From the IMG/VR virus record IMGVR_UViG_3300042868_005134, positions 186,001-250,000 of that record: a stretch of 64,000 nucleotides of DNA, one strand, 5' to 3'. The position numbers and the translations under genes are program-made. Position 1 is the stretch's first letter, and each line of letters opens with the position of its first letter. The notes under the pieces are model-generated. The model saw only the letters and a list, made by a program, of their open reading frames with translations. It had not been told where the DNA came from and made no database searches. Below are positions 36,398-60,195 of this stretch, in pieces.

Positions 36398-36401
36398 TCT
36401 C

Positions 36402-37682: not shown

Positions 37683-37686
37683 CTAG

Positions 37687-38232
37687 ATGAAAATACTTAT
37701 TACTGGAAATCCAAATTTTGGCTTAGCATCTGAATTGTTTAAGCTATACCCTGACGCAACATTCATATCGAGAGAAAGTGGATATGATTTAACCACCCGA
37801 GAAGGTTATCGTAAACTAGGTGAGATAGTCGCAGAATACGATATTTTTATCAATTCAAGTGCGTTATGGAAATTTAATCAAACGCTAGTACTTGATGCTG
37901 TATATAAAAAATGTGTAGAGATCAAACACAATATGCGAATCATTTGTATAGGTAGCACTACAGATAGAGTTAAGAAAGCAACATCGTGGATTTATAACGC
38001 TGAGAAAAAAGCACTACGTGATTATTCAAATAGTTTAAGTTTAACAGGTGTGTGGGATTCAGGCCCAACAGTCTCGCTAATCAGTTTTGGCAGTTTGTCT
38101 AATGTACAAGAAAAACACCCAGGCCGTGTTTGTTTAGAACTATCACGTGCCGCATCTTATATTAAATGGTTGATTGACCAGCCTTCGGATATATGTATTA
38201 ATGAAATCAGTATTGACCCTTTACAACATTAA
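37687..38232 (+). CDS. Short-chain dehydrogenase/reductase (SDR)
   Basis: 'KILITG...GL' Rossmann start, 'FINSSA', 'IGS', catalytic YxxxK ('YNAEK'). Confidence 0.75.
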   Translation: MKILITGNPNFGLASELFKLYPDATFISRESGYDLTTREGYRKLGEIVAEYDIFINSSALWKFNQTLVLDAVYKKCVEIKHNMRIICIGSTTDRVKKATSWIYNAEKKALRDYSNSLSLTGVWDSGPTVSLISFGSLSNVQEKHPGRVCLELSRAASYIKWLIDQPSDICINEISIDPLQH

Positions 38233-40658: not shown

Positions 40659-40659
40659 G

Positions 40660-41916: not shown

Positions 41917-41920
41917 GAAA

Positions 41921-41950
41921 TATTTATCGATAAAATACAGCGGTTAAATA
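41921..41950. promoter_or_regulatory. Divergent pair of late-like promoters
   Basis: TATTTAT (41921-41927) and TAAATA (41945-41950), each 4 nt from its ATG. Confidence 0.65.
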
Positions 41951-41954
41951 TAGT

Positions 41955-43358: not shown

Positions 43359-44172
43359 AAATTTAGAATGGGTCCCTGGCGATCCTATCACAAAAGAAAT
43401 GCTAGAGGTTAAGTCAGAAGATTACGCATTGTGGAAAAAAACGTGGGGCGATAGCTACTGTGTTGAAAATGTATTTGACGATGATGAGTTGACCTGGTTA
43501 GAAGATTTAATGTATAGAAATCATAAAAGTCGACGTGTTAAGAAAAATGGAACGCTTCACTTTAATGTAGATAACAGACTGATACAAGATAAATTTTTTG
43601 ATAAATTAAAATCAGTTATTCCTGAATTGGAAAATACTGAATTATGGGAAGGCAATTTTTTAATAACTGCTACTCCATATAATATACATATCGACACCGG
43701 TAATCACCAAGTGATGAGTAATGCTACCTATGTTCCGGGGAAGCAATTTATTATTCCTCTTTGGTTCTGTCACGGACACAAAGAGACAGATTATCCTGAA
43801 CACGGCACCGCTATTTTTAAAAATCGATTTATCATGTACGGAACAAATTTTGCCAAAGGAGACGCAAAATATGACACAAATGTTTTTTATACAGTACGTG
43901 ACTATAAGGATTTAGTATGCTATAATAAAGATGGCTCCGTGTGGAACGTTGATTGGTCTAAGCGTAGTGTAAGCGATAACGACTATATTAGATACTTTGA
44001 TCACTTTAAAAGAGAATGGCTAGACGGTTTTGAATTAGAAGCAGTCTACCAATGGAAACGTGGAAGTATTATTGTATTTGATAGATCACAAGCGCACACT
44101 GGCATCAATTTTATGAAAAACAAGGTAACACTGAAATGTGGGTTATCTATGATGACAACAGTTAAAAGATAA
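43345..44172 (+). CDS. Putative 2OG-Fe(II) oxygenase-fold protein
   Basis: HxD ('IHIDTG') and distal His ('WKRGSIIVFDRSQAH'), matching the HxD...H facial triad in a double-stranded beta-helix pattern. Confidence 0.6.
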   Translation: MEQHKNLEWVPGDPITKEMLEVKSEDYALWKKTWGDSYCVENVFDDDELTWLEDLMYRNHKSRRVKKNGTLHFNVDNRLIQDKFFDKLKSVIPELENTELWEGNFLITATPYNIHIDTGNHQVMSNATYVPGKQFIIPLWFCHGHKETDYPEHGTAIFKNRFIMYGTNFAKGDAKYDTNVFYTVRDYKDLVCYNKDGSVWNVDWSKRSVSDNDYIRYFDHFKREWLDGFELEAVYQWKRGSIIVFDRSQAHTGINFMKNKVTLKCGLSMMTTVKR

Positions 44173-45236
44173 TGAAATATTTGCCGAACCCAAAAAGACT
44201 TCAATTTGAACTTAGCAATGTATGTAATCTACATTGTTTAGGTTGTGTGCGAACTGAAACTACACTTAATTCAGTTAAAGCTGCTATCGGCGATCCTACT
44301 TATCTTTCAGTGGATACTTTTTATAAAATAATAACAGATAGCGCACTTGATAGTATTGTGGATTTAGATTTTTGTGGCAGAATAGATGACCCATTAGCAC
44401 ATCCGGATTTTCTAAAAATATTAGAAATGGCAATCGAACATAAATCTTTTAAAATTTTCATTCACACAAATGGCGGATTGCGTAATCCTGAATATTGGAA
44501 AAAACTCGGAAATTTGTTAAAAGGTACAGACCATGTTGTTATGTTTAATGTAGATGGTCTCGAAGATACTAATCACATTTATAGACAAGGGAGTGTCTGG
44601 AGCAATATTGTAGCTAATGCCAAATCTTATATTTCTACAGGTGCTAATGCTACGTGGCAATATATAGAATTTCCTTGGAACAAACATCAGATTCCGGAAG
44701 CATTGTTATTAAGTAAAGAATTGGGCTTTCAAAGTTTTAACGTTCGTCAGGACCGTAGTCGTATACAACATAAATCACTAGAACAAATAGTAGTTATGAA
44801 ACAACGAACACAAATACCAGAACAAAATAGAGACACTTTTTTATTACATCCAAGATACGATACTAGTTATGAAATCACATGTATGAATAAAGTAGACAAC
44901 ATGTATTTTATAGATCATACTGGTAAGCTATGGCCCTGCTGCTTTATTCCAAACGGTTTTATAGAAGATAATAATAAGTTAGCTCAGAAAGAATATTTAC
45001 AAGACAGAATATATGGCAGCTACTCGGATACTACATGGAATGACTGTAACTTACACGATGTATCTTCTATTATAAATCATAAATTTTATACAGAAGATTT
45101 AGTAGATAGTTGGAATTCAGAACAACACGGCATTGAAACTAAAGACAGAATTTTTAGATGTACTGAAACCTGCTCTTCTCGCGCATCCGCCATTAAGCCA
45201 TCTGCAAATTCTACAACTAAAAAATTTAATCAATGA
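44172..45236 (+). CDS. Radical SAM enzyme (type C)
   Basis: CNLHCLGC; 'CGRIDDP'; 'HTNGG'; C-terminal 'TC...FID..G..WPCC...CTETC'. Confidence 0.9.
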   Translation: MKYLPNPKRLQFELSNVCNLHCLGCVRTETTLNSVKAAIGDPTYLSVDTFYKIITDSALDSIVDLDFCGRIDDPLAHPDFLKILEMAIEHKSFKIFIHTNGGLRNPEYWKKLGNLLKGTDHVVMFNVDGLEDTNHIYRQGSVWSNIVANAKSYISTGANATWQYIEFPWNKHQIPEALLLSKELGFQSFNVRQDRSRIQHKSLEQIVVMKQRTQIPEQNRDTFLLHPRYDTSYEITCMNKVDNMYFIDHTGKLWPCCFIPNGFIEDNNKLAQKEYLQDRIYGSYSDTTWNDCNLHDVSSIINHKFYTEDLVDSWNSEQHGIETKDRIFRCTETCSSRASAIKPSANSTTKKFNQ

Positions 45237-46300
45237 TAGCAAAAGATCAAATCAAAATAGTTCATGTTGAAGCTAGTAGTAGATGTAACAGCAGATGCCC
45301 TATGTGTAGTAGATTCACTGCTGATGGATTCGTACAGCCTGAATTAAACGAATTGGATCTAACCGGCGAAGTTTTTTATAAGCTATTTACTAAGGATTTT
45401 ACTAGTCAGCTAGAGCATGTCTATTTTAGCGGAGTATACGGCGATCCTTGCTTGAATAAATTGTTGCCTGAATTTGTTAACTACTTAATGGATAACGGCT
45501 GTAAAAGTGTTAGCATAGATACTAACGGCGGATATCGTAGTGAAGAATGGTGGGCTAAACTTGCTAGAAAAGACGTTCTAATCAATTTTGCGTTGGACGG
45601 CACAGATAATGAAACGTTGGATAAGTATCGTATTGGAGTAGTGTACGACAAAGTATATGCTAATATGAAAGCATATATAGAAGCTGGCGGCAATGCTCAG
45701 TGGAACTTTATTGTATTTAAACATAACGAACATCAAGTAGACATAGCAAAGCAATTGGCATTGGATATGGGCGCAAAGTTTAGACTTAAGGTAACACAAA
45801 AGTTCCGTGGTCGAAAAAATCATAAAGTTATGATAGATGGTGAACTACAACATACATTAGAGCCACCAGATCAAGAATCATTCAGACATCCGAATATAGG
45901 AACTATTGATCATATTCCTATTAGTATTTTTAAGTTTAAAGATTATTCAAGATTATCTCATCTTAACGGAAACAAAGTCACATGTAAAATTCAACAACGA
46001 CAGGAAGTTTACTTAACAAGTATTGGCTTGCTATTACCCTGTTGCTATCTTGCTACTTATACACATGATAGTCCAGGATCCGCACAGTTTACTAGTTTGT
46101 ATAATTTAGAAAAGTTCGATTTAAAATTACTCTCCGTTGTTGAAATTTTAGAAAATTTTAAACCAATAAGTAACAAATGGAATGATACCATAGATGATGG
46201 CAATTTAATTATTTGTTTAGGCACTTGTGGCAATAAAGAAAACACTACTCTTTATCATGATAACAATTTGAAAAAAGAAAACATTTTAAAACAGCAATGA
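45233..46300 (+). CDS. Radical SAM enzyme (type C)
   Basis: CNSRCPMC; 'SGVYGDP'; 'DTNGG'; C-terminal 'TCK...LPCC...CLGTC'. Confidence 0.9.
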   Translation: MIAKDQIKIVHVEASSRCNSRCPMCSRFTADGFVQPELNELDLTGEVFYKLFTKDFTSQLEHVYFSGVYGDPCLNKLLPEFVNYLMDNGCKSVSIDTNGGYRSEEWWAKLARKDVLINFALDGTDNETLDKYRIGVVYDKVYANMKAYIEAGGNAQWNFIVFKHNEHQVDIAKQLALDMGAKFRLKVTQKFRGRKNHKVMIDGELQHTLEPPDQESFRHPNIGTIDHIPISIFKFKDYSRLSHLNGNKVTCKIQQRQEVYLTSIGLLLPCCYLATYTHDSPGSAQFTSLYNLEKFDLKLLSVVEILENFKPISNKWNDTIDDGNLIICLGTCGNKENTTLYHDNNLKKENILKQQ

Positions 46301-47658
46301 CAGCAAAATCTAAGACATTTTGTATATTACCTTTTATACATATTCAAGTTAAACCTAACGGTCAAATAAAGCCGTGTTGCCGATTCGATTTTGTACACGA
46401 CGACTACATTGACAAAGACTGGACTGCTAAAAATGGATCAGCGTATCATGTTTTTAACAAGTATAATATCTCTAACGGTTCTACTCTAACCGAAGCCATG
46501 ACTAGCAATTTATGGAACGATGTTAGAAACAATATGCTAAATGGAAAACCAGTTAGTGGATGTAGGAAGTGTTATACCGCAGAAACTTTTAACGGCAGAT
46601 CTATGCGTGTGCATGAAAATTACGCTAGGAATGATCAAATACAGGACAGTTTATCTAGCAGTATTGAACCATTAAAAATAAAATATCTTGAAATGACTTT
46701 CGGTAATTACTGTAATTTAAAGTGTAGGACATGTGCTGGGGATTTATCGAGTACATGGCACGAAGAAGAAGCATTGTTAGCAAAGGTTTACCCTGGACGA
46801 TATAGCTCACCTAAAGTTTTAAACATCCCGTTTAATTGGAAACCCGAAGATTTTGTTAATATAGAAGAAATTAAATTCACAGGCGGCGAGCCTATGATAC
46901 ATCCTGATTTTTTAAAATTAATGGATATGCTAATTGAAATTGATGTTGCTAAAAATATTGCTCTAGATGTTTTTACAAACTGTAGCTGGATTCCCGGCGG
47001 GAAATTTTTTAAGCGGTTAACTAAATTTAAACAAGTAAAAATTAGTCTAAGTATAGATGGCGTTGGAAAAACTAACGATTATATCAGAACGCCTAGTGAC
47101 TGGCGTGTTGTCGATAGTGTAGTTGATAGTTGGCTTGCTCAGGAAGCAGCTGATACTAATAAGATTCAAATAACTTGGAACCCAACTATCAACATTTACA
47201 ATATTTTAGAAATAGATAACATGATAGATTGGTGGGATAACAAACAAAACGGACATTTTCCCAATCGCTCATGGCCTAATCTAACGGAAAAAGATTATAA
47301 AGAAGATCATAACATATCAAGTTTTAGATTGATTTTTAATATACTACAAGATCCTAAGTATTTGTCAATCTCCAATTTGCCACAATCTGCTAAAGAATTA
47401 GCTAATCGTACAATAAAATCTATATATGACAAATACGATTCTTGGGATATGGCAGAAAATCCTCGTAAAGAAATTTTTAATAAAAAAATGGAAGCAATTA
47501 GAGGAGCATTAAATTCCACAGCAAACATAGAAATGTTAAAATTATTTGCTAGTTATACTGAAGATTTAGATAAATTACGTACACAGTCTTTAAAAGATTC
47601 CTTACCATTATTGTATAAAGAATTAGAAGGGCACGTGGACTATACAGGAAAATTGTAA
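46297..47658 (+). CDS. Radical SAM enzyme (type A)
   Basis: 'FCILPF.H...NG.IKPCC...GCRKC'; core CNLKCRTC; 'GGEP'. Confidence 0.9.
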   Translation: MTAKSKTFCILPFIHIQVKPNGQIKPCCRFDFVHDDYIDKDWTAKNGSAYHVFNKYNISNGSTLTEAMTSNLWNDVRNNMLNGKPVSGCRKCYTAETFNGRSMRVHENYARNDQIQDSLSSSIEPLKIKYLEMTFGNYCNLKCRTCAGDLSSTWHEEEALLAKVYPGRYSSPKVLNIPFNWKPEDFVNIEEIKFTGGEPMIHPDFLKLMDMLIEIDVAKNIALDVFTNCSWIPGGKFFKRLTKFKQVKISLSIDGVGKTNDYIRTPSDWRVVDSVVDSWLAQEAADTNKIQITWNPTINIYNILEIDNMIDWWDNKQNGHFPNRSWPNLTEKDYKEDHNISSFRLIFNILQDPKYLSISNLPQSAKELANRTIKSIYDKYDSWDMAENPRKEIFNKKMEAIRGALNSTANIEMLKLFASYTEDLDKLRTQSLKDSLPLLYKELEGHVDYTGKL

Positions 47659-48902
47659 TGAGCAAGACTTTTTGTGTTATGCCATTCTGCCATGTCAATA
47701 TTAAACAGGAAGGTAAGGTAAGTGCTTGTTGGAGATATCCTGATAAAATTGGAGATTATACCACACAGAGTATACATGAAGTTTGGAATGGTTCTGAGAT
47801 AAAAGAATTACGTAGACAACTACTCAACGACGAGCGTCCTGTAGGATGCCGTAGTTGTTGGGATATGGAAGATAGCGGAGTTCGTAGTACACGATCACAA
47901 ACAGCAGTCGATTATAAAGACATAATGAATATTGAAAAAGCAAAAGCAGTAATTACTGAAGATTTTGCTATGCCCGACGAAAATTTAAAAAGTATCGAAC
48001 TTAGATTTGATAATATTTGTAATTTAATGTGTAGGCACTGTAGTCCTGACTATAGCAGTAAGTGGGAAGCGGCAGTTAAACGAGATGAAAAACTACAAAG
48101 TAAAATGATTCAGTTTGGCACTTTTAGAAAAAGTGATGAGCATATAAATCTTAACCAGAAAATTATTGATGAAATTGGTGGTACTATTTCTTCAAATTTA
48201 ACAGAGATTATGCTAGCAGGCGGCGAACCTTTATATCACGAACGCCATTATGATTTTATTAAATCGATGTTACCGAATGCTAAAAATATAAAACTTAGTT
48301 ATAATAGTAATTTAACCACATTAGATTACAAGGGTAATTCCATTTTAGATTTATGGAAGCACTTTAAAAAGGTTAATTTGCGTGTTAGTATTGATGGCGA
48401 TCCTAGTTGTTATCAATATGTTAGAGCACATGACGGCTTGACTTTAATTGAAAAAAACATTACACTAGTACATAACGTGCCTAATACTAGAGTTAGTGCA
48501 ACATGTACTACTAGTTTATTGAATATAACAAGATTGATATCGATTATAGAATATTTTTTGTCGTTAGGCGCATATTTTCATGCCAGTATAGTTCAATACC
48601 CACGGGCGTTGAATCCTAAGTTGTTACCACTAGAATTAAAAGAAAAAATAACAACTGATTGGACTAACTGGATTGCCGACATTGACACAAACATTGTAAA
48701 CTGTGTAAAGTTATTGCCAACTACAGACGTTGAATCTCATAAGAAAAACATATTGAAGTTTGGAAATATGATAGTTGATTATATGAATTCGGAAAACTGG
48801 CACGAACACTGGCATGAATTTGTGGATTATTCTGCGGTGCTAGATGACCATTTTAAAACAGACTTGTATAGTGTGTATCCTGAATTTAAATTTGTAAAGT
48901 GA
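47658..48902 (+). CDS. Radical SAM enzyme (type A)
   Basis: 'FCVMPFCH...G.VSACW...GCRSC'; core CNLMCRHC; 'GGEP'. Confidence 0.9.
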   Translation: MSKTFCVMPFCHVNIKQEGKVSACWRYPDKIGDYTTQSIHEVWNGSEIKELRRQLLNDERPVGCRSCWDMEDSGVRSTRSQTAVDYKDIMNIEKAKAVITEDFAMPDENLKSIELRFDNICNLMCRHCSPDYSSKWEAAVKRDEKLQSKMIQFGTFRKSDEHINLNQKIIDEIGGTISSNLTEIMLAGGEPLYHERHYDFIKSMLPNAKNIKLSYNSNLTTLDYKGNSILDLWKHFKKVNLRVSIDGDPSCYQYVRAHDGLTLIEKNITLVHNVPNTRVSATCTTSLLNITRLISIIEYFLSLGAYFHASIVQYPRALNPKLLPLELKEKITTDWTNWIADIDTNIVNCVKLLPTTDVESHKKNILKFGNMIVDYMNSENWHEHWHEFVDYSAVLDDHFKTDLYSVYPEFKFVK

Positions 48903-48906
48903 AAAT

Positions 48907-50226
48907 ATGGAAGATTGGAAAAATACGTATTGTTCTAAATCCTGGACTGATGTTAATGTAGACTTTTCAAGCGAGTTTGTTAAAAATTGCTGTAAATCGA
49001 AGCCTATTAAATTTGTACCTAATTTAGATAAAACTTTCTTTGAGTTCTCTCCAGAGTTACTTAAACGCAAGACTGATAGCTTACAAGGAGTACAAAATGA
49101 AGATTGTCATTTTTGTTGGAAAGAAGAAGGTAAGCGTGTAACTTATAGAGATGTACATAATAAATGGACACCTGAATTTATAGAATTAAATCGTGATAAC
49201 TTATTATCTACTGATAAATCATTTGCGAATTATATTGAAGTTAAGTTCTCCAATACTTGCGATATGGCTTGTTTATATTGCGGCCCTAATTTTAGTAGTA
49301 AAATAGCCATAGAAGAAAAAGTTCGAATTAAAAGTGTGCCGTTAGCATCTGAATTTGAAGCTTTTAAAGAATTTTCAGATCCGCTAATTAAAAATGCAGT
49401 TGAAATTAATAGAGAATCTATTGATAATAGTGTGTGGGATAATACACAATTACGATTTGTATTCTTAGGAGGCGAACCCACGTTGATAGATCAATTTTAT
49501 GATTTTATTGAACATATTGTATCTAGAGTTGAACATCATGCTCAACTAGCAAACTGGAAGCACAAAATGAAAAATATCCGTCTTGAAATTGTCACTAATG
49601 GTAATACTACCCCGGCATTAATGGACAAGTTTTTTAAATTATTATACAGTACAAATTTTGAATGGACAATTGGGATAAGTAACGAATCTTTTGGGCATGA
49701 TGCTGAATTGATCAGACATGGGTTAAATTGGGAACGATTTCAAACTAATTTTAAAAAATATATTTCTGTTCCTAAAAAAATTGACAGCATTAATTTAGCA
49801 CCAACTCTTAATATTTTTAGTTTAAAAACATTTCATCTCTACATGGCATGGGTACATGAGCAATTCGATAATCAGTTAAAATTAACAGGTGTTTGTCCAG
49901 CTTTTACATGGCACGGCAATTTTGTAACAGATCCGGTATTAGACATTAAAGTATTGCCAGTTGAATATAGAAAGTACATTGATCTTGCCATTGAAGTTGC
50001 TGAACGTGAAAATAATCCTAAATTTAAGAATAAAAAAAGTACAATTAAATTTTTAAATCAGATGAAAGATAGGATTGGCACAACTGATCCTGAATCAGAT
50101 GATGCTGTATGGTATAGAGAACGAGCGAGAGATTGGCTTGTGATGAAAGAAAAAAAGAAAGGAGTTAGTAATCTAACACCTTTACTATTGAATATCGAAT
50201 ATCATGATTATAAAAGGTATCTGTAA
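48907..50226 (+). CDS. Radical SAM enzyme (type B-like)
   Basis: 'YCSKSW...NCCK...DCHFC'; core CDMACLYC; 'GGEPT'; 'VTNG'. Confidence 0.88.
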   Translation: MEDWKNTYCSKSWTDVNVDFSSEFVKNCCKSKPIKFVPNLDKTFFEFSPELLKRKTDSLQGVQNEDCHFCWKEEGKRVTYRDVHNKWTPEFIELNRDNLLSTDKSFANYIEVKFSNTCDMACLYCGPNFSSKIAIEEKVRIKSVPLASEFEAFKEFSDPLIKNAVEINRESIDNSVWDNTQLRFVFLGGEPTLIDQFYDFIEHIVSRVEHHAQLANWKHKMKNIRLEIVTNGNTTPALMDKFFKLLYSTNFEWTIGISNESFGHDAELIRHGLNWERFQTNFKKYISVPKKIDSINLAPTLNIFSLKTFHLYMAWVHEQFDNQLKLTGVCPAFTWHGNFVTDPVLDIKVLPVEYRKYIDLAIEVAERENNPKFKNKKSTIKFLNQMKDRIGTTDPESDDAVWYRERARDWLVMKEKKKGVSNLTPLLLNIEYHDYKRYL

Positions 50227-51398
50227 TGAGCGATGATTTATCTTGGTCAGCCTACGACTTTACAAAAATTCCATACAATGATATTCAACGTGTGGGTCAA
50301 CGCACAATGTTATATCGTGACTTGTTTACAGTAAGTTGGCTGTTAGGCCGGTTCTGTAATTATCGATGTAGCTACTGCTGGCCCTATGCTCGCAGTGATA
50401 AAAAAGATCATAGACCTACAGAGTTATGTCTGCTTACGGTAGATGAGATTAAACGTCAAGCTAGAGAGCGAGGATTTAATAGTTTTCACTTTAGTCTAAG
50501 TGGCGGCGAACCAACATTTCATCCAGGCTATATTGATATCCTAAATCATCTTAATAACGACGCAGGGAATACAAACTATACCAGTGTACACATGACAACA
50601 AATATGAGTCGCAGTTTACGTTGGTTTGAAGATGAGTATTGTCCTGCTGTAAGTAAGTTTCACAGAGCTAGTATCACTGCCAGTCTACATACCGAACATG
50701 TAGACACACCAGAGAAAATGCAAGACTTTGCTGACAAATTAATATTGTGTCAAAAACACGATGTTCAAATAACTATCAATATGGTTATGGTTCCTGAATG
50801 GTTCGAACGTGACTTTGAAAATGCATTGTTCTTTCACAATCAGGGAATTAATGTAACACTAAAACCTCAGAGTGATCCTACTGCTAGCCGTGTAGTAGAT
50901 GGGTATACTCCTGAAATGTTAAAACGATTACACAATGGAATGCCACAACGTGCCTTCACAGAGAATAAAGCAGATGAAGCTAAATTAGTCAAACGCCCAA
51001 CTCCTACATTTAGAAAAGTTCCTGATCCATTGTACAAAGAAGAAAACGCAAAAATTCCACAACATTTCCAAGTAGAATTTGTTGATAGCAATAAAAAAAT
51101 CTGGTATATGGATCAAGCTGAACGATTCAATGCGTTCAACTTTAATAAGTTTAAAGGCTGGGAATGTTCCAGTGGATATCGTAGTATTATTATACGTGAA
51201 CCAGATGGCAGCATAAAACGCAGTTATAGCTGTAGTGATGTTCCGTTAGGTAATGTAGAAACTGGCTTTAAATTGTTTGACGGTCCAACGCCGTGTATAA
51301 GTGATAGCTGTGTTAGCAGTGCTGACAGTAAGATTCCAAAAAGATCGCCTGGAACTCATTTACCATTGTGGCCAGGCGATACTACTTATCTTGCTTGA
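50226..51398 (+). CDS. Radical SAM enzyme (type D)
   Basis: CNYRCSYC; 'SGGEPT'; C-terminal 'FKGWECSSG...DG...SYSC...PC...SC'. Confidence 0.9.
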   Translation: MSDDLSWSAYDFTKIPYNDIQRVGQRTMLYRDLFTVSWLLGRFCNYRCSYCWPYARSDKKDHRPTELCLLTVDEIKRQARERGFNSFHFSLSGGEPTFHPGYIDILNHLNNDAGNTNYTSVHMTTNMSRSLRWFEDEYCPAVSKFHRASITASLHTEHVDTPEKMQDFADKLILCQKHDVQITINMVMVPEWFERDFENALFFHNQGINVTLKPQSDPTASRVVDGYTPEMLKRLHNGMPQRAFTENKADEAKLVKRPTPTFRKVPDPLYKEENAKIPQHFQVEFVDSNKKIWYMDQAERFNAFNFNKFKGWECSSGYRSIIIREPDGSIKRSYSCSDVPLGNVETGFKLFDGPTPCISDSCVSSADSKIPKRSPGTHLPLWPGDTTYLA

Positions 51399-52726
51399 TG
51401 TAGACATTCTAAATATAATTTTTTTGTGTCTAGCATAAGATATCTGTTGTAATTATACATTATAATTTCTTTCCAAGAATCATATAACTTTTGCTTTTCC
51501 TCCAATGGAAGATTAGCGATTGCCTTTACTTTGTCAATTACGTATTCTAATTCGTCAAAATAATGCCTTTCATTATTGCTCGGTAATTCGAGACCAGGAT
51601 ATTCTTTAAATCCTAGTGATTTTAAAATATTTTTAATTTTATGACCGCCCAAGGTAATGAAAGGTACTCCTGACAAGATTGCCATTGAAGTTTTTTCTGT
51701 CAACATTGACGGAGTGCAATCAAAATCTTCACCGCTAATAATGGAACAAGTTTCTAGCACTATATGAAACATTGAATTTATTTCAAATGGTATCCCTGCT
51801 ATATCTTTTCTTAAATGATCTTTAGAACCGTGATCTATAAATTTTAAGGTATTTAAATTTTCTAGCTTGGTGTGTATAAAACTTAATTGTTTTTGATACT
51901 TGTGAATAATTCCTGTATTTTTACAGTCTTCTACAAACGAATCTTTTGCAGGCAATAATCTACTGTATTGACCAAAATCAGTTATCTTTTCTTTGTCTGC
52001 CCACAATTGGAATAATGTCCTAGTTAGTCTCGGTGTCCTGCAAAACGATTGCCATACTAATGTATCTTGTGTTAGTACTCTATTTCTAATTTCTTCAAAT
52101 AATGCTTCTTTTTTAGATTTCGCATTCGAATATAAATCAGAATCAATATATGCTTTATGAAAAAACGCTCCTGGAAACATGCAGTGATCTACCTGTATGT
52201 TTCTTGACCTATTAGACATATAGTTATTAACAAGTTCGCCACCTACAACATAAAATTTAAGATTTTTAATTCCTCTAAAGAAATGATTTTTAGCAGTTAA
52301 GTAATTAACATACTCGGTTTCAAATAATTTGTAAGATCTAATATAGACATTATCCATTTCGGCAGAGCCGTCGATTATTATAGGAATTTTATTTTCAACT
52401 AAGAAATCTGTCACATCTGGATCTACAGCAAAAAAATCTGTTAAATGAAAAGTCTTAACATGTAACCAAGCTGAAATAAAATAAAATACATCGACATTTT
52501 TATCAATTGTACCGTTATTCTTTACCTCAGCAATAAATTCACCAGCTTTTCTAAAAGTAATAAAATCTGAAGAGCAATTATACAATGTCCTAGGAGTTTC
52601 TGAAATCCAGCCAAATTGGTAGCCTTCTGTAACTAACTTGGCAATCAATTTTTCGTATACTCTTTCTAGTAAAGTTACAACTTTTCCATCTACGATATCG
52701 TCAACTAAAAATATTGCTTTTTTCAT
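51386..52726 (-). CDS. Putative glycosyltransferase, GT10 (fucosyltransferase)-like C-terminus
   Basis: 'FHIVLET...LTEKT..AI..G.PFI..G' resembles the GT10 donor-binding motif (F.L.FEN...Y.TEK...A...G.VPI); coupled by an ATGA overlap to gmd. Confidence 0.45.
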   Translation of the reverse strand: MKKAIFLVDDIVDGKVVTLLERVYEKLIAKLVTEGYQFGWISETPRTLYNCSSDFITFRKAGEFIAEVKNNGTIDKNVDVFYFISAWLHVKTFHLTDFFAVDPDVTDFLVENKIPIIIDGSAEMDNVYIRSYKLFETEYVNYLTAKNHFFRGIKNLKFYVVGGELVNNYMSNRSRNIQVDHCMFPGAFFHKAYIDSDLYSNAKSKKEALFEEIRNRVLTQDTLVWQSFCRTPRLTRTLFQLWADKEKITDFGQYSRLLPAKDSFVEDCKNTGIIHKYQKQLSFIHTKLENLNTLKFIDHGSKDHLRKDIAGIPFEINSMFHIVLETCSIISGEDFDCTPSMLTEKTSMAILSGVPFITLGGHKIKNILKSLGFKEYPGLELPSNNERHYFDELEYVIDKVKAIANLPLEEKQKLYDSWKEIIMYNYNRYLMLDTKKLYLECLHQAR

Positions 52727-53721
52727 CTTGCGTTAGGATTTGTCTTATAAAAATCCATCCAGTAATCTACCATCTCATCTAACATAGATTCAAAGGTATA
52801 TGTTGGTACCCACCCAAGTGTTGTTCTAGCTTTGGATGAATCACCTTTTAAATAATGTAACTCTTCGGGTCGTTTAAATTTTTCATCGGAAAATACGTAT
52901 TTTGTTCGATCCAGTTCTAATTTTTCAAATACATAGTTAACTAAGTCATTAACTGTTTTTGTCACACCAGTCGCAATTACATAATCATCACTTTTTTCTT
53001 GTTGTAGCATTAACCACATAGATTCTACAAAATCTTTAGAATGACCCCAATCCCTTGCTGCTTCAAAATTACCTAAAATTAATTTTTTAGATTTACCTAA
53101 TTTAATTTTGACAGCCTCTAATACAACTTTGTTGGTTACAAAATTAATACCACGTCTTGGGCTTTCGTGATTAAACAAAATTCCAGAACATATAAACATG
53201 TTGTACGCATTTCTATAATTATGACATAGACTATGTGCGTATAGCTTGCTACAACCATATGGCGATACAGGTATTAATGGAGTGGTTTCTCGTTGAAACC
53301 CGTCAGAGTCACACGAGTTTCCAAACATTTCCGATGTTGCTGCATGGTAAACTTTTGAATGATTGGAAAATTTTCTAACAGCTTCAAGTACTGACAATGT
53401 TCCGCCAGCATTCACATCGAGTGTATACTTTGGTAATTCAAAGCTAATCTGTACATGACTTTGTGCGCCAATGTGATAAATTTCATCTGCCTGTACATTG
53501 CTTATTACACTTTCTACACTTAGCGGATCGGTAAGATCCATGTATTTCAACTGAATACGGTTGTCCTTGAACAAATGCTCTATGCGAGTAGTTTGAGATT
53601 CAGGCACAGAGTTACGTCTTACTGTGCCTGCCACTTTGTAATTTTTAGAGACTAATAGTTCGGCAAGGTAAGAGGCATCTTGTCCATTTGCTCCAATAAT
53701 TAATGCTGTTTTTTGAGTCAT
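52723..53721 (-). CDS. gmd: GDP-mannose 4,6-dehydratase
   Basis: 'GANGQDASYLAE', 'AQSHVQISF', 'TSEMFG', 'SPYGCSK', 'NHESPRRG.NFVT.K', 'RDWGH'. Confidence 0.95.
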   Translation of the reverse strand: MTQKTALIIGANGQDASYLAELLVSKNYKVAGTVRRNSVPESQTTRIEHLFKDNRIQLKYMDLTDPLSVESVISNVQADEIYHIGAQSHVQISFELPKYTLDVNAGGTLSVLEAVRKFSNHSKVYHAATSEMFGNSCDSDGFQRETTPLIPVSPYGCSKLYAHSLCHNYRNAYNMFICSGILFNHESPRRGINFVTNKVVLEAVKIKLGKSKKLILGNFEAARDWGHSKDFVESMWLMLQQEKSDDYVIATGVTKTVNDLVNYVFEKLELDRTKYVFSDEKFKRPEELHYLKGDSSKARTTLGWVPTYTFESMLDEMVDYWMDFYKTNPNAR

Positions 53722-53722
53722 A

Positions 53723-54877
53723 TTATTCCTGATTTATAATCGAAGCAATAACTTCGATGTCTTCCTTAACTAGTCCTTGATGATTAGGAACATAAAAACC
53801 TTGTTTATCAATAATATCGGCATTTGGTAAATCTGTCAAACGTCCGTATCGTTTGATCCAGAAAGGTTTGTTTGCCATATTGCCAGCAATTAAGGGACGA
53901 GTTTCAATATTGTTTTGTTTAAGTTTTTCTATAATTTTATTTCTATTGGGCAATACAACAGGGTATGCGAAATTTGAAACAAAGTCGTTATCTCGTTGCG
54001 CAAGTAATAATTTGTTATTGTTAATTAGTTCTTTATAAATTAAAAAGTTTTTGTTACGTATCCGACTGTACTTATCCAACTTGTCAACTGCTCCAAGTCC
54101 AATGAACGCCTGTAAATCTGTTGATCTAACATTGAGTCCCGGTACGTAAAATGTATATAATGCTTCAAAGTCAGTTACATTGGCTTGCTTTCTTAATTCT
54201 TGTTGTTTACTTGTTGGCAAATCTCTATCCCATCCATGACTACGCATCATTAGTAATCCGTGATAAAATTCTTCATTATCAGTATTAATAAACCCGCCTT
54301 CGATGGTGCTTAAATGATGACCAAAGTAAGTGGAGAACAGCGACGCAATACCAAATGATCCTAAATACTTTCCTTGATATTTAGAACCCATTGATTCGCA
54401 ATTATCTTCTACTAATAGAACTCCGTATTCTTCGCACAAGTGTACTATTCTTTGTATATCTGGTACTAATCCTAATGGAGTTACCAAAATGAATACAGAT
54501 GGTTCAAACTCTTTAAAAATAGTTTCTAAGTGGGCAAGGTCGCACGATAGGTCAACTAAATTACAGTCACATAGACGTGTTTCAAAATTTAACAGCATAG
54601 GGGAACTTACATCGGTAGACCAACTCAGTGCCGGAGCAACTAATCGATTATTCTTTAAGAAACCAAACTCTTTTAATACTGCTAACGAAAGTAAAATAGC
54701 TGACGAGCCTGAGTTGACAAATACAGAATATTTTGTTCCTATCTTCTTTGCCCATTTGCGTTCTAACTCAATTGTTAATTCGCCTTTGGTTAATCGAGGA
54801 ATCGTATCCTGCGATAGCCATTCTACAAGTTTAGCAATGTCAGATTTATCAATAGTATCACTGACCAAATTTATCAT
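53723..54877 (-). CDS. colD: GDP-4-keto-6-deoxy-D-mannose 3-dehydratase (ColD-like; DegT/DnrJ PLP family)
   Basis: 'VNSGSSA.LL', 'EDNCESMG', 'STYFGHHLSTIEGG' with His at the position of the usual PLP-binding Lys, 'RSHGWDR', 'PG.NVR'; lies between gmd and an fcl-like gene. Confidence 0.75.
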   Translation of the reverse strand: MINLVSDTIDKSDIAKLVEWLSQDTIPRLTKGELTIELERKWAKKIGTKYSVFVNSGSSAILLSLAVLKEFGFLKNNRLVAPALSWSTDVSSPMLLNFETRLCDCNLVDLSCDLAHLETIFKEFEPSVFILVTPLGLVPDIQRIVHLCEEYGVLLVEDNCESMGSKYQGKYLGSFGIASLFSTYFGHHLSTIEGGFINTDNEEFYHGLLMMRSHGWDRDLPTSKQQELRKQANVTDFEALYTFYVPGLNVRSTDLQAFIGLGAVDKLDKYSRIRNKNFLIYKELINNNKLLLAQRDNDFVSNFAYPVVLPNRNKIIEKLKQNNIETRPLIAGNMANKPFWIKRYGRLTDLPNADIIDKQGFYVPNHQGLVKEDIEVIASIINQE

Positions 54878-55754
54878 ACGTTTTCCTTATGCCATCTCGT
54901 AAGGTAGTTAAACCAAACTCTGGAAATATTTTTGTTAACTTACTTATACTAACATCTTTTCGAAGTTGTCCATTAGGCATAGTTGTATCCCAGTTTATTG
55001 ATAGATGAGTAGCATCACATACATCTAACGCAATTTCAGCAATTTCTTTTATAGTTAATGTTTCGTTTGTGGCAACATTAAAACTTTCAGTAATATTATT
55101 ATCTATTACAAATTTAATAACATTACAAAAATCATCAACATGCATAAATTGTCTTAACGGTGTACCATCTCCGAATAAAGTAATAGAGTTATCATTATTT
55201 TGTTTAGCTTGCCATATCTTTTTAATTAAGGCTGTTACAAAATGACTGTTATTGCCATGCTTGTCTCCTTCTCCAAAAAGATTACACGGAATAAGATAGC
55301 TATATTGTGTGTTGTATTGTGTATTGTACGCATCAATTTGTACTCCTAAACATCGCTTTGCATAACCGTATGAAAAATTAGTAGGAGTAGGCGGCCCTAA
55401 ATGTAGCATGTTTTCGTCGAGTGGGTATGTCTCAACTACATCCGGATAAATGCAAGTGCTTAATACTCCAATGAATTTCTTTACATTATACGCATGGGCG
55501 TATTTTACTAATAATGTATTCATCAGTATATTTTCAGTAAAGTACGGTGCTGGATTATTAATGTTATCAATGATTCCGCCAACTTTAGCGGCAAGGTGAA
55601 TAATACAATCTGGTTCTAATTCTTTATACATGTTGATTACATGTTGTTCGCAAGTTAAGTCATAATCTGCCGATGACAAATATATTGCGTCTGAAATATA
55701 TTTTTTTAAATTGGCACCGACTAATCCACTTCCGCCAGTTACAACTATTTTCAT
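54858..55754 (-). CDS. GDP-4-keto-6-deoxysugar epimerase/reductase (Fcl/ColC family)
   Basis: 'TGGSGLVG', 'HLAAKVGGI', 'STCIYP', YxxxK 'YGYAKR', 'P.NL.G', 'GDGTPLRQF.H'. True start probably the ATG at 55754, which overlaps the upstream stop. Confidence 0.9.
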   Translation of the reverse strand: MKIVVTGGSGLVGANLKKYISDAIYLSSADYDLTCEQHVINMYKELEPDCIIHLAAKVGGIIDNINNPAPYFTENILMNTLLVKYAHAYNVKKFIGVLSTCIYPDVVETYPLDENMLHLGPPTPTNFSYGYAKRCLGVQIDAYNTQYNTQYSYLIPCNLFGEGDKHGNNSHFVTALIKKIWQAKQNNDNSITLFGDGTPLRQFMHVDDFCNVIKFVIDNNITESFNVATNETLTIKEIAEIALDVCDATHLSINWDTTMPNGQLRKDVSISKLTKIFPEFGLTTLRDGIRKTYDKFGQ

Positions 55755-56515
55755 TGTTTTCTCTCTATATCTTCTTCTATACATTCTGTACCGTATTGTA
55801 TTTCCACAATACGACAAACCGCTTCGAACGGATTATGTATTTTATGCCAATTGCCCAAAGGTATTACTACCTGAGAATGTTGTGTTAATGTTAGCATAGG
55901 CAATGCGTAGCCGCTCGTCAACTGCTGTTCTAATACGCATTGTCCTTCAGCAACGTGCCAAAATTCGTGACGTTTTAAATGCCGTTGCATGCTTAATGAT
56001 TGTCCCGGTTCTATAGTAAGCTCTTTTACTTTACAACCGTTTACATCATATAGTACTTGATAGTAACCCCATGTACGTGATGTTTTAATAGATTTCCATT
56101 CTTCCAATATCCAACTACTTGAATTTTTCTTTGTGTTTCCGCCAACTCCAAATACAAACTCTAGTTTATCGTCTACTAAGTCCATTTCATGTATATTTTC
56201 TTTTGTACGGTCTCCACCGTTGGCAAAAATAATAGTAGCATCGGGGTACATAGCTCTAACACCTGTGATAGTGTTTTTACTACTACCGTCGGCATCAGGG
56301 TAACAAACCACTTTATCTACAACTTTAAGAGATTCAATGATGCGGCAACGTTCGTATTCTTCCATAAAGGCCTGACCCTTTTTACGAACTAACCAATCAT
56401 CTGTATTAATACCAACAATCAGCATGTCACCTAGTTTACTAGCTGCTTCAAAGTACTCAATATGCCCAGAATGAAGGGGGTCGAAACCCCCTGTTACAAG
56501 TACGATTCTTTTCAT
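55751..56515 (-). CDS. Nucleotidyltransferase (HxGH) fused to a mannose-6-phosphate isomerase type II-like cupin
   Basis: N-terminal 'TGGFDPLHSGH...RKKG...ANGGDR'; C-terminal 'RTWGYY...KVKEL.I.PG.SLSMQRH..R.E.W.V...EIQYG..C.EEDIER'. Confidence 0.85.
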   Translation of the reverse strand: MKRIVLVTGGFDPLHSGHIEYFEAASKLGDMLIVGINTDDWLVRKKGQAFMEEYERCRIIESLKVVDKVVCYPDADGSSKNTITGVRAMYPDATIIFANGGDRTKENIHEMDLVDDKLEFVFGVGGNTKKNSSSWILEEWKSIKTSRTWGYYQVLYDVNGCKVKELTIEPGQSLSMQRHLKRHEFWHVAEGQCVLEQQLTSGYALPMLTLTQHSQVVIPLGNWHKIHNPFEAVCRIVEIQYGTECIEEDIERKQ

Positions 56516-56519
56516 ACAC

Positions 56520-56527
56520 TATTTATA
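56520..56527 (-). promoter_or_regulatory. Exact T4 late promoter TATAAATA heading the nucleotide-sugar operon
   Basis: TATAAATA on the minus strand overlapping the thyX stop, 4 nt before the ATG at 56515. Confidence 0.65.
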
Positions 56528-57203
56528 GTGTATTTGCCATAGGAAAAATTTCAGCAATTACTTTAGCACAAGCAAGAGCGATATGTTGATGTTCTTTTTG
56601 AGTACCGTTTTCTTTGCGGAGATCAATGTAGTGAATCCAACTACGCAATGTACCATTCATATACATACGGCTGATAGTAAGCCCTTCAGGCAGCACTGCT
56701 CTAGCTTGTTCTTTAGCAATGCCGTTCTTGATAGCCCACGCATACTCTTGTTTGACCGAAAAAAGCACTCGTTTTTGGGCCCGCTCCCATTCAATGGCAA
56801 TTAATTTTTGTGCTTCGTCACTCATATCTGCTTCTACACTATTCTGACGATTTTTTGTATCTTGGAATCTAGCTTCACGCAATACAAACGCTTCGTCTAG
56901 TTCTGCTGTTGGATCAGCATAACGCTGACTAAATTCTTGAAAGCTAAAACTGCGATGACGTAGAATTTGTCTAGCAATATCACGTGTGGTTTCAATTTCA
57001 ATACAGGCACTTACCATTTCAAGAGGACTCCAGTGTTGATGCTTAATCAAATATTTGATTAATTTCTCACTTGTCTCTGTGTTAAATTGGTTGGCAGGAT
57101 TACTGACTCTCGCACAATACGCAACAAGATCTAATGCGTCTTTGATATTTTGTTGACGAAATTCTTCTGTTGGCTGACTATTCGATACTAATTTAACTTT
57201 CAT
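56523..57203 (-). CDS. thyX: Flavin-dependent thymidylate synthase
   Basis: ThyX motif 'RHRSFSFQEFSQRY', plus 'H.SPLE', 'KEQARAVLP' and 'LRSW.HY..LR'. Confidence 0.95.
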   Translation of the reverse strand: MKVKLVSNSQPTEEFRQQNIKDALDLVAYCARVSNPANQFNTETSEKLIKYLIKHQHWSPLEMVSACIEIETTRDIARQILRHRSFSFQEFSQRYADPTAELDEAFVLREARFQDTKNRQNSVEADMSDEAQKLIAIEWERAQKRVLFSVKQEYAWAIKNGIAKEQARAVLPEGLTISRMYMNGTLRSWIHYIDLRKENGTQKEHQHIALACAKVIAEIFPMANTL

Positions 57204-58630: not shown

Positions 58631-58909
58631 TTAGGCTAAATGTGGACAAGCAAGTCTGAAAAAACTAAGTTCTTTTTCAGATTCGAATCCTATACGTGTA
58701 GTATAAATTATGGTATTGTCGATAATGCCTATGTATTGCCCTACATAATATCGACTATTAAGATTGGCATAGATCCAGCGATCTATATGATTAGACAATA
58801 CAGGATTGTACTTGGGTACATCTGTATAGTGAAAATGATGCGCTGGAAACGAGACTTTTCTCAGATCCAGCGCATTAAGCGGATTTATTTTACCGTTTTT
58901 TAACGCCAT
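58631..58909 (-). CDS. Hypothetical protein
   Basis: 92-aa ORF coupled by a TAATG overlap to the vWA gene. Confidence 0.65.
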   Translation of the reverse strand: MALKNGKINPLNALDLRKVSFPAHHFHYTDVPKYNPVLSNHIDRWIYANLNSRYYVGQYIGIIDNTIIYTTRIGFESEKELSFFRLACPHLA

Positions 58910-60120
58910 TAACTACTTGCTTCTTCTTCGTAATAAGCATGGGCGCCCCAAGGTGGCACAATGCTGGTAGTACCGTGAATAATAAACACTGTATCGCAGT
59001 AGTTTTCATCACCCCATGAATCCCACGGATAACCGTCTGTGAACATGATAAACTTCTTAGGGTTAATGTCATGTTGCTTCATGTATTCCCAGTTAGCCAT
59101 AAAGTCAGTACCACCACCGCCCATTGGTTCGTACTCGGTAATATCGTTGCCGCCGTAACCGTCGAAGTCTTGTTCGTTATAGACTTTAGTATCGAAACAC
59201 CAAACTTTAATACTGTAGTCCTTGTACTCGTCCATAATGCCTTTAATTTCAGTTAAGAAATCTTTAGCTTGCTCATCGCTAATAGAACCTGACATGTCAA
59301 TACTAATACAAATGTCGATAGTTTCATCAAAATTCATACCTGGCAAAATAGCACCAGTGTGCCATGCCTTACGACTAGGACGACTAAAGGTATAGTCATG
59401 CTTGATAGTGCTTTGAATTTGCTGACGCAAAATTTGACGCCAGTTCATTTTAGGTTCTGTCAACTCACGGATTATACGCTGAATTTCAGCAGGAGTGTTA
59501 CCTGCTCCAGCAGTCTGCGCCGCGGTGATAGTAGCTTCGCGAATTTCGTCACGAATCTTTTTCAATTCTTCTTTACTATATTGTGGCCGACCTTTACCGG
59601 ATCCGGGTTGATTACCACTACCATCGCCATCACCTTTTTGCCAATCGATATGTTCGTCGAGCAATTGACCAAGAGCAGACAAACTTTGTTCGTCCATGTC
59701 TTCGTAAATTTCGTCGTACACTTGTTCAGCACTTTTGCCGTAATGCTTAGGATCGTGGAAAATTTTAATACCTTTTGGCTGATCTCCAATACGGTCTCGA
59801 ACCAATTGCCCATTTACACAATAGTCGATTGCGGCATTCCAAATGCCTCGATCTCTGCCTTCTGTGCGGGCAATGTGGTCAAATACATTGTGTAGGATTT
59901 CGTGTGCCACCACAAACTCAACTTCTTTAGCACTGAGTTTTTCAAAGAACGGTCGGCTGTAGTACAGGCTGCGCCCATCTGTAGCCGCAGTATTACACCA
60001 TTCGCTGGCATCGACAATTTTCAATCGCGTTGCCATGTTGCCAAAGAAAGGATGGCGGAGTAGCAAACCAATCCGTGCTACAATAATTTTATCAACAATT
60101 GGGTCTAAATCATGCGACAT
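58909..60120 (-). CDS. vWA-domain protein with N-terminal HExxH putative metallopeptidase (DUF2201-like)
   Basis: 'TAATDG', 'VVAHEILH', MIDAS 'IDMSGSI', 'GGGGTDF', 'FTDGY'; adjacent to a MoxR ATPase. Confidence 0.85.
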   Translation of the reverse strand: MSHDLDPIVDKIIVARIGLLLRHPFFGNMATRLKIVDASEWCNTAATDGRSLYYSRPFFEKLSAKEVEFVVAHEILHNVFDHIARTEGRDRGIWNAAIDYCVNGQLVRDRIGDQPKGIKIFHDPKHYGKSAEQVYDEIYEDMDEQSLSALGQLLDEHIDWQKGDGDGSGNQPGSGKGRPQYSKEELKKIRDEIREATITAAQTAGAGNTPAEIQRIIRELTEPKMNWRQILRQQIQSTIKHDYTFSRPSRKAWHTGAILPGMNFDETIDICISIDMSGSISDEQAKDFLTEIKGIMDEYKDYSIKVWCFDTKVYNEQDFDGYGGNDITEYEPMGGGGTDFMANWEYMKQHDINPKKFIMFTDGYPWDSWGDENYCDTVFIIHGTTSIVPPWGAHAYYEEEASS

Positions 60121-60149
60121 ACTTGCTCCTGTTATTTGCTATAGTATAT

Positions 60150-60178
60150 ATTATAACACCGCCCGCAGGCGGTGTCAA
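60150..60178 (-). promoter_or_regulatory. Consensus sigma70 promoter for the vWA gene
   Basis: TTGACA, 17 bp, TATAAT on the minus strand; SD AGGAG downstream. Confidence 0.88.
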
Positions 60179-60195
60179 TTGGATTTGGCTACTAA

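What the first reader, a model, noticed from the sequence alone, without database searches (positions are those of the whole stretch)
51386..52726. Orphan ORF at the end of the sugar operon may be the colitose or fucose transferase
Seen: it is translationally coupled to gmd, and its C-terminal 'FHIVLET...LTEKT..AILSGVPFITLG' resembles the GDP-fucose-binding motif of GT10 fucosyltransferases; the N-terminal part is not recognisable. Inference: a divergent GT-B enzyme that consumes the GDP-sugar made by the upstream genes.
Basis: inference. Interest (0 to 1): 0.6.

Follow-up and report, generated by a model that had tools for sequence, protein, structure and literature searches.

The report
Unclassified phage glycosyltransferase after colitose genes
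The orphan gene is a real, conserved two-domain (GT-B) sugar transferase of a large, phage-only family that no database names, and in this lake-water jumbo phage it most likely attaches the rare sugar colitose, made by the three genes in front of it, to a target that is still unknown.

Summary
The ORF (51386-52726, minus strand, 446 aa) is real. Its ATG overlaps the gmd stop codon (ATGA), and the quoted motif is there and is the best-conserved part of the protein. Pfam, PHROGs, NCBIfam and PDB sequences give no match. An AlphaFold model (pLDDT 92) is a clear GT-B glycosyltransferase. For its C-terminal domain, three GT10 fucosyltransferases tie for best match with GT47 and GT90 enzymes. A profile-profile comparison with 11 bacterial GT10 proteins aligns the E...TEK motifs at P 0.003-0.008; GT11, GT4 and reversed controls give P 0.2-0.85. 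That is weak but specific, and not enough for GT10 membership. The upstream genes are Gmd, a ColD-type 3-dehydratase (active-site His kept) and an Fcl/ColC-like reductase, so the sugar is GDP-colitose rather than fucose. In sister phages the orthologue follows other cassettes: a sugar dehydrogenase, with or without a methyltransferase; an oxygenase plus aminotransferase; or none. Its constant neighbour is a convergent radical SAM gene, and it evolves far faster than its flanks. It is therefore a variable transferase, not a dedicated colitose enzyme family. Donor and acceptor are untested.

The parts
51386..52726 (-). Target gene: 446-aa soluble GT-B glycosyltransferase of an unclassified phage family (P0001)
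   Evidence: ORF and translation. AF2 model pLDDT 92.3, pTM 0.91. GT-B matches by Foldseek and VIA-align. No Pfam, PHROG, NCBIfam or PDB-sequence hit.
51641..51775 (-). Donor-site motif, residues 318-362: strand ...VLET (E325), loop, LTEKT (T343-E344-K345), helix, PFI..GG (G360-G361)
   Evidence: Invariant columns in alignment A1. Most conserved block of the protein. It is the region through which about 2000 distant relatives match. It aligns to the GT10 'EN...YxTEK...PIYWG' motif by hhalign. Codons checked by eye: 51692-51700 = ACA GAA AAA (TEK); 51752-51754 = GAA (E325).
52028..52030 (-). Codon of invariant R233 (with near-invariant R236), just after the first strand of the C-domain; candidate diphosphate-binding arginine
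   Evidence: Invariant in A1. Position relative to strand E223-227 and helix H234-245 in the model. The analogy to Arg226 of AtFUT11 (PMC12929593) is inferred, not superposed.
52723..53721 (-). GDP-mannose 4,6-dehydratase (Gmd); its stop overlaps the target's start (ATGA)
   Evidence: PF16363 E 2.5e-108. TIGR01472 362 bits, below the cut-off of 415. About 50% identical to bacterial Gmd.
53723..54877 (-). ColD-type GDP-4-keto-6-deoxymannose 3-dehydratase (DegT family)
   Evidence: Best PDB matches are E. coli ColD/WbdK 2gms, 3gr9 (E 4e-56), against perosamine synthase at 2e-23. The His-His at the ColD active-site position is retained.
54858..55754 (-). Fcl/ColC-like SDR (GDP-L-colitose synthase candidate); true start is ATG 55754, overlapping the upstream stop as ATGA
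   Evidence: NF047922 GDP-fucose synthase 202 bits, cut-off 500. PF01370. Start codon read.
55751..56515 (-). Fusion of a HIGH-type nucleotidyltransferase (cytidylyltransferase-like) with a PMI-type cupin; first gene of the variable sugar island; candidate sugar-1-P activating enzyme
   Evidence: PF01467 + PF01050 + PF07883. RfaE domain II / ManC C-terminal matches. PDB cytidylyltransferases. Present upstream of the cassette in most relatives.
50226..51398 (+). Convergent 390-aa radical SAM gene whose 3' end overlaps the target's 3' end by 13 nt; the one neighbour kept in every relative examined
   Evidence: PF04055. 74-98% identical and adjacent in 11 of the 12 related loci; in L006 it lies about 6.6 kb away.

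Best explanation
The ORF encodes a cytosolic, metal-independent GT-B glycosyltransferase. It belongs to a large family that is almost only found in phages and that no database classifies. The nucleotide-sugar site in its C-terminal domain is built like that of GT10 fucosyltransferases. It has an arginine after the first C-domain strand (R233/R236), a strand ending in E325-T326, and a T343-E344-K345 turn at the start of a helix. In GT10 the matching Glu binds the guanosine and the matching Lys the diphosphate. In this phage the gene is the last of five translationally coupled genes: NTase-cupin, ColC-like, ColD, Gmd, GT-B. These should turn a mannose phosphate into GDP-L-colitose. The transferase most likely moves colitose from GDP-colitose, with inversion, onto an acceptor held by its N-terminal domain; invariant S121/E123 are candidates for the catalytic base. 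The acceptor is unknown. It could be a phage or host glycan or protein, possibly the product of the adjacent radical SAM array. Shown here: ORF, coupling, conservation, predicted fold, identity of the neighbours. Inferred: donor, residue roles, inversion, acceptor.
Confidence: 0.55

Rival explanations
1. It is a glycosyltransferase, but its donor is not the cassette product. It uses some common or NTase-cupin-derived nucleotide sugar, or acts within the radical SAM pathway. GDP-colitose is then used by another transferase, for example the 1137-aa GT2+GT4 protein or a host enzyme.
For: The constant neighbour in relatives is the convergent radical SAM gene, not any sugar gene. L010 has no sugar gene upstream, and L133 has an oxygenase plus a short DegT. 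Other GTs exist in the genome.
Against: The ATGA coupling to gmd and the tight five-gene block. In 11 of 13 related loci examined, a nucleotide-sugar-modifying gene lies directly upstream; L010 has none and L009 is cut off there. A phage fusion of a GDP_Man_Dehyd-type domain with this fold exists.
Confidence: 0.22
2. It is a true, very divergent GT10 alpha-1,3/4-fucosyltransferase using GDP-L-fucose made by Gmd plus the Fcl-like enzyme.
For: GT10-like motif and fold matches. The Fcl-like gene's best NCBIfam match is GDP-fucose synthase. The known colitosyltransferase WbgN also accepts GDP-fucose (PMC12723683).
Against: PF00852 does not match the protein, its 41 relatives or the genome. The E-N of GT10 is E-T here, and the spacer to TEK is 19 residues instead of about 10. 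A ColD with an intact active site sits between Gmd and Fcl-like and diverts the intermediate to colitose. The Fcl-like score is far below the equivalog cut-off (202 against 500).
Confidence: 0.1
3. It is a DNA glycosyltransferase like T4 beta- or alpha-glucosyltransferase, decorating modified bases in the phage genome.
Confidence: 0.05
4. It has a GT-B fold but is not a Leloir glycosyltransferase. It could be, for example, a phosphotransferase, an epimerase-like or a hydrolase-like enzyme, or a catalytically dead scaffold.
For: No sequence family assignment. Hypervariability relative to the flanks.
Against: Invariant charged residues sit exactly at the canonical donor-site positions. All structural neighbours are transferases. 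Full-length ORFs are kept in all relatives.
Confidence: 0.08

Closest known systems
GT10 alpha-1,3/4-fucosyltransferases (Pfam PF00852; H. pylori FucT 5zoi, human FUT9 8d0o, A. thaliana FUT11 9s6a)
   Different: No HMM-level match. E-T replaces E-N. The loop between the two motifs is about 9 residues longer. The protein is about 120-130 residues longer than the bacterial GT10 proteins used here. The N-terminal domain shows no sequence similarity. The predicted sugar is colitose rather than fucose. The family is phage-restricted.
WbgN, alpha-1,2-colitosyltransferase of E. coli O55 (cited in PMC12723683)
   Same: It is the characterised enzyme with the predicted activity: transfer from GDP-colitose, with GDP-fucose tolerated.
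   Different: From my own knowledge it is a GT11-type enzyme. The phage family shows no profile similarity to a GT11 alignment (P 0.38-0.76).
GT47 exostosins (EXT1/EXT2 7zay, EXTL3 8og1) and GT90 protein O-glucosyltransferases (POGLUT1/2)
   Different: 7-10% identity. They use UDP-sugars. No TEK-type motif was tested or seen. They are eukaryotic secretory-pathway enzymes.
T4 beta-glucosyltransferase (1c3j)
   Same: Phage-encoded GT-B; highest whole-model Z (12.0).
   Different: High rmsd (6.8 A) and 7% identity. Weaker at domain level. Its substrate is DNA and its donor is UDP-glucose.

Membership tests
GT-B glycosyltransferase superfamily | Two Rossmann-like alpha/beta domains with a cleft, and C-terminal helices packing back on the N-domain | tested here: met
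GT-B glycosyltransferase superfamily | Conserved basic and acidic residues in the C-domain that bind the nucleotide diphosphate without a metal | tested here: inconclusive
   R233, E325, E344 and K345 are invariant at the expected secondary-structure positions. No coordinates could be superposed on a ligand complex with these tools.
GT10 (Pfam PF00852 Glyco_transf_10) | Match to the family HMM above its gathering score | tested here: not met
   No hit for P0001. No hit for any of 42 members at E<=10. No hit in the whole phage genome at E<=1. 84 distant superfamily members have no Pfam hit.
GT10 (Pfam PF00852 Glyco_transf_10) | Alpha-1,3-FucT motif: F-x-L-x-F-E-N ... Y-x-T-E-K ... P-I/V-Y/V-x-G | tested here: inconclusive
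   The family has V-L-E-T ... L-T-E-K-T ... P-F-I-x-x-G-G. Bacterial GT10 proteins fetched here have the canonical form. hhalign aligns both blocks. However, N is replaced by T, Y by L/F, and the spacer is 19 residues rather than about 10.
GT10 (Pfam PF00852 Glyco_transf_10) | Significant profile-profile similarity | tested here: inconclusive
   hhalign P 0.0026 (A1), 0.0035 (A3) and 0.0079 (broad C-domain profile), probability 5-11%. Controls (GT11, GT4, reversed) give P 0.2-0.85.
GT10 (Pfam PF00852 Glyco_transf_10) | Closest structural neighbours are GT10 enzymes | tested here: inconclusive
GT10 (Pfam PF00852 Glyco_transf_10) | Inverting transfer of L-fucose from GDP-beta-L-fucose | not testable with these tools
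   Needs an enzyme assay.
GDP-L-colitose pathway (Gmd, ColD, ColC) in the upstream genes | PLP-dependent 3-dehydratase with His instead of the aminotransferase Lys (ColD) | tested here: met
   Best PDB hits are ColD (E 4e-56). The His aligned to the residue changed in the 3b8x variant is kept.
GDP-L-colitose pathway (Gmd, ColD, ColC) in the upstream genes | Gmd and an Fcl-like epimerase/reductase (ColC) | tested here: inconclusive
   Gmd: PF16363 over its full length, but TIGR01472 gives 362 bits against a cut-off of 415. Fcl-like: 202 bits against a cut-off of 500. ColC cannot be told from Fcl by these models.
T4-type DNA glucosyltransferases | Sequence family match and DNA-binding features | tested here: not met
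   Pfam, which includes the T4 BGT family, gives no match to the protein. The structural match is long but loose (rmsd 6.8 A) and is not the best at domain level.

The most novel reading that the evidence does not exclude
The gene stands for a new glycosyltransferase family, deserving its own CAZy number, that split from the GT10-like lineage and has radiated only in phages (at least 2000 sequence clusters). In lake jumbo phages it is the fast-evolving transferase of a swappable sugar island: NTase-cupin, then an interchangeable nucleotide-sugar cassette, then the GT-B. This island feeds the neighbouring array of about a dozen radical SAM enzymes. Together they would build a hypervariable glycoconjugate, such as a glycosylated and radical-SAM-tailored peptide, virion protein or glycan, that matters in phage-host recognition. 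This would also be the first phage-encoded colitose pathway with its own transferase.
Probability: 0.2. Interest if true: 0.75.

Novelty: new variant of a known kind. Interest (0 to 1): 0.5.

Why it matters
If the assignment holds, four things follow. First, a family of at least about 2000 protein clusters, now blank in Pfam, PHROGs and NCBIfam, becomes readable as nucleotide-sugar transferases in phage genomes. Second, it adds a second, unrelated type of colitosyltransferase to the single characterised one (WbgN), which is useful for enzymatic synthesis of rare 3,6-dideoxyhexose glycans. Third, it shows that freshwater jumbo phages carry a complete pathway, from sugar activation to transfer, for a sugar otherwise known from bacterial O-antigens. 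Fourth, the contrast between near-identical flanks and a 40-80% identical transferase marks a diversifying locus. Such loci are usually tied to host recognition or immune evasion. The link to a large radical SAM array points to chemistry that has not been described.

Tried and rejected
1. Sequence family scans of P0001 in Pfam, PHROGs and NCBIfam found nothing. Pfam at E<=10 on all 42 relatives gave only scattered chance hits.
2. PDB sequence searches with the single protein, the family profile A1 and the superfamily profile A2 gave only chance hits with E>0.2.
3. tblastn against 50,697 GenBank phage records found no match.
4. Pfam and PHROGs scans of 84 distant superfamily members were run to find a bridge to a named family; none was found.
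5. Foldseek on the isolated C-domain gave no match at E<=1e-3; several listed rows are receptor entries that presumably carry a fused glycogen-synthase domain. VIA-align was used instead.
6. I tested whether GT-B divergence tracks the type of upstream cassette, which would tie it to the donor. It does not: phages with the same DH+methyltransferase cassette have GT-B genes only 45-50% identical while their radical SAM neighbours are 89-98% identical.
7. I tested whether the donor or the acceptor domain varies more. Both diverge about equally.
8. I tried to fix the nucleotide of the sister-phage dehydrogenase. It is equidistant from UDP-glucose and GDP-mannose dehydrogenases, so this stays undecided.
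9. The search for RNA evidence found no RNA run holding the locus.
10. Complex prediction was not used, because no protein-protein binding is claimed.
11. Promoter and terminator scans were not above shuffled expectation in any useful way.
12. Residue-level superposition on GDP-bound GT10 structures could not be done, because model and PDB coordinates are not exposed by the tools.

Full report
**Setting.** The window is bases 186001-250000 of a 383,411-base IMG/VR virus record that CheckV rates complete. It carries a tail-collar protein, a head-fibre-like protein and a 4651-aa ORF. By ESM Atlas taxa, relatives of the target protein are almost all Uroviricota. It is therefore a jumbo tailed phage. 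The locus occurs near-identically in at least 24 lake-water metagenome runs and in two further IMG/VR contigs.

**Observation.**
- The ORF 51386-52726 (minus strand, 446 aa) starts with an ATG that overlaps the stop codon of the upstream gene as ATGA.
- That upstream gene is a full-length GDP-mannose 4,6-dehydratase.
- The quoted motif lies at residues 320-361.
- The protein has 46 relatives by word search. A profile of 42 full-length ones finds 2097 cluster representatives at E<=1e-3 among 1.84 billion.
- Most of those match through the last third of the protein. Their consensus there reads V.ET...F.TEKT.KPI....PFI..G.
- E325, T343, E344, K345, G360 and G361 are invariant in the close family. 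Residues 341-360 are the most conserved block.

**What the protein is.**
- No sequence model recognises it: Pfam, PHROGs and NCBIfam, Pfam at E<=10 for all 42 members, PDB sequences with the single sequence or profiles, and GenBank phages all fail.
- The 84 distant relatives also have no Pfam or PHROG family.
- An AlphaFold2 model built on the 42-sequence alignment is confident (pLDDT 92.3, pTM 0.91). It has two beta/alpha domains plus C-terminal helices.
- Foldseek finds GT-B glycosyltransferases (BshA, E 5.5e-6; 47 matches at E<=1e-3).

**Test of the GT10 idea.**
- I fetched 11 bacterial GT10 proteins by searching genomes with PF00852 and aligned them. Their invariant columns give the canonical E-N ... 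Y-x-T-E-K ... P motif.
The TEK blocks align in all three runs. With the broad profile the VLET and FEN strands align as well.
- The same queries against GT11 and GT4 alignments, and against all three target alignments reversed, give P 0.2-0.85.
- The signal is therefore specific, but HH probability is only 5-11%.
- The PF00852 model itself finds nothing in the protein, its relatives or the genome.
- The ESM Atlas feature search names GT10 clusters as the nearest annotated ones, at a score the tool treats only as a lead (0.81).
- In AtFUT11, the Glu-Lys pair of the TEK motif (Glu280, Lys281), Asn271 and Arg226 bind the guanosine and pyrophosphate, and a Glu in the N-terminal part is the catalytic base (PMC12929593).
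- The phage family keeps E344-K345. It has T326 where GT10 has Asn, and an invariant R233 after the first C-domain strand. It also has invariant S121/E123 after the fourth N-domain strand.
- I could not superpose coordinates, so these equivalences are inferred.
- Verdict on this point: it works like a GT10-type donor site, but membership of GT10 is not established.

**The sugar.**
- The gene before gmd is a DegT-family protein. Its best solved relatives are E. coli ColD (E 4e-56), well ahead of perosamine synthase (2e-23). It keeps the His that replaces the usual Lys in ColD.
- The next gene upstream is an Fcl-like SDR, far below the GDP-fucose synthase cut-off (202 against 500 bits), as expected for ColC.
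- Its real start is ATG 55754, which overlaps the stop of the preceding gene as ATGA.
- That preceding gene fuses a HIGH-type nucleotidyltransferase to a PMI-type cupin.
- Five coupled genes thus run from sugar activation through Gmd, ColD and ColC to the transferase. The predicted product is GDP-L-colitose, not GDP-fucose.
- The only characterised colitosyltransferase I found cited, WbgN, accepts both donors (PMC12723683).

**Context in relatives changes the picture.** I examined 13 related loci.
- The colitose cassette is present only in copies of this same phage (L129, L130).
- L002, L004 and L006 have a divergent nucleotide-sugar 6-dehydrogenase instead.
- L005, L007, L008, L131 and L132 have that dehydrogenase plus a SAM methyltransferase.
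- L133 has a P4H-like 2OG oxygenase plus a short DegT protein.
- L010 has no sugar gene upstream. L009 is cut off.
- A convergent 390-aa radical SAM gene overlapping the 3' end, followed by more radical SAM/SPASM/twitch genes, is present in all of them. Only in L006 is it displaced, by about 6.6 kb.
- Pairwise identities show the transferase is hypervariable. The radical SAM neighbour is 89-98% identical between phages whose transferases are 39-81% identical. This holds within one cassette type too: L005 against L007 gives 95% for the neighbour and 50% for the transferase.
- ThyX upstream is 95-97% identical in the closest relatives.
- The family is therefore not a colitose-specific one. It is the variable transferase of a swappable sugar island set in a conserved backbone.
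- More distant superfamily members also sit beside a GT4 gene, a sugar dehydrogenase plus methyltransferase, or a P4H-like oxygenase.
- One Atlas phage cluster fuses a GDP_Man_Dehyd/Epimerase domain to this fold.
- Together these support a nucleotide-sugar role for the whole superfamily.

**Other transferases in the genome.** The phage has one copy of this family. It also has a 244-aa GT2 and a 1137-aa GT2+GT4 protein about 170-195 kb away. The target is the only transferase near the cassette, but not the only one in the genome.

**Mechanism proposed.** The enzyme is a cytosolic, metal-independent, probably inverting GT-B. GDP-colitose binds in the C-domain through R233/R236, E325-T326 and T343-E344-K345, and the acceptor binds the N-domain. 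The acceptor is unknown. Candidates are a glycan or protein connected with the radical SAM array, a virion protein (the island lies about 20 kb from the fibre genes), or a host envelope glycan. A DNA-glycosylating role like that of T4 BGT is unlikely.

**Novelty and score.** The fold and chemistry are of a known kind. The family is unclassified, large and phage-restricted, and it has a GT10-like but distinct donor motif. A phage-borne colitose pathway with its own transferase was not found in the literature searches made here. I rate it a new variant of a known kind, interest 0.5.

**Limits.**
- Everything about donor, acceptor and residue roles is inference from gene order, conservation and predicted structure.
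- No expression data exist for the locus.

Noticed in passing
window 34254-51398 (+ strand mostly; also 35419-36369 and 40660-41916 on -): An array of about 13 radical SAM genes. Several belong to the N-terminal twitch/SPASM type NF033640 (314, 311, 238 and 158 bits). The array is conserved next to the transferase gene in every relative examined. Its substrate is unknown. A T4-like marine viral genome with 12 radical SAM genes is mentioned in PMC5332604.
   Followed up: partly
window 55751-56515 (-): An unusual fusion of a cytidylyltransferase-like HIGH nucleotidyltransferase (RfaE domain II / TagD-like) with the cupin of type II phosphomannose isomerase. It is always the first gene of the variable sugar island and is itself variable (58-86% identity). 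It may be a non-canonical sugar-1-phosphate nucleotidyltransferase that replaces ManC.
   Followed up: partly
window 54858-55817 (-): the ORF listing starts the Fcl/ColC-like gene at TTG 55817, overlapping the upstream gene by 67 nt. The sequence shows ATG at 55754 in an ATGA overlap, followed by MKIVVTGGSGLVG, so the gene is 54858-55754.
   Followed up: yes
L002, L004-L010, L129-L133 compared with window 50226-57203: There is a swappable cassette between the NTase-cupin gene and the transferase: colitose genes, a sugar dehydrogenase, a dehydrogenase plus methyltransferase, a 2OG oxygenase plus short DegT, or nothing. The transferase diverges roughly ten times faster than the flanking thyX and radical SAM genes.
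   Followed up: yes
window 39534-40658 (-): A 374-aa protein with a weak nitroreductase-family match sits inside the radical SAM array and is conserved in L002. Enzymes of this family act as dehydrogenases in some peptide-modification pathways (own knowledge). This was not pursued.
   Followed up: no
L006 9392-10090 and L133 5636-6379; unnamed contig of P0064: Protein-hydroxylase-type genes lie directly beside members of the transferase family in three unrelated contexts: Asp/Arg hydroxylase PF05118 and P4H-like 2OG oxygenase PF13640. This hints that the acceptor could be a hydroxylated protein.
   Followed up: no
window 4031-17986 (+) and 20407-23352 (+): A 4651-aa ORF whose only match is an FG-GAP repeat, followed by a 981-aa protein with a phage tail collar domain. 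These are probably giant fibre or adhesin genes about 20 kb from the sugar island.
   Followed up: no
window 58909-61287 (-): A MoxR-type AAA ATPase (363 aa) and a DUF2201/VWA-like protein (403 aa) form a pair that is conserved upstream of thyX in all relatives with enough flank. Their Pfam families were seen in the relatives' gene tables.
   Followed up: no
ESM Atlas cluster (row 4): A phage protein cluster of about 705 aa (90 members) carries Epimerase/GDP_Man_Dehyd domains and also aligns structurally to this transferase (TM 0.56 over 335 residues). It is a likely natural fusion of a sugar-nucleotide enzyme with this fold.
   Followed up: no
L005 3908-5268: Two tandem thyX genes (220 and 233 aa) in one relative, where the window has one.
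   Followed up: no
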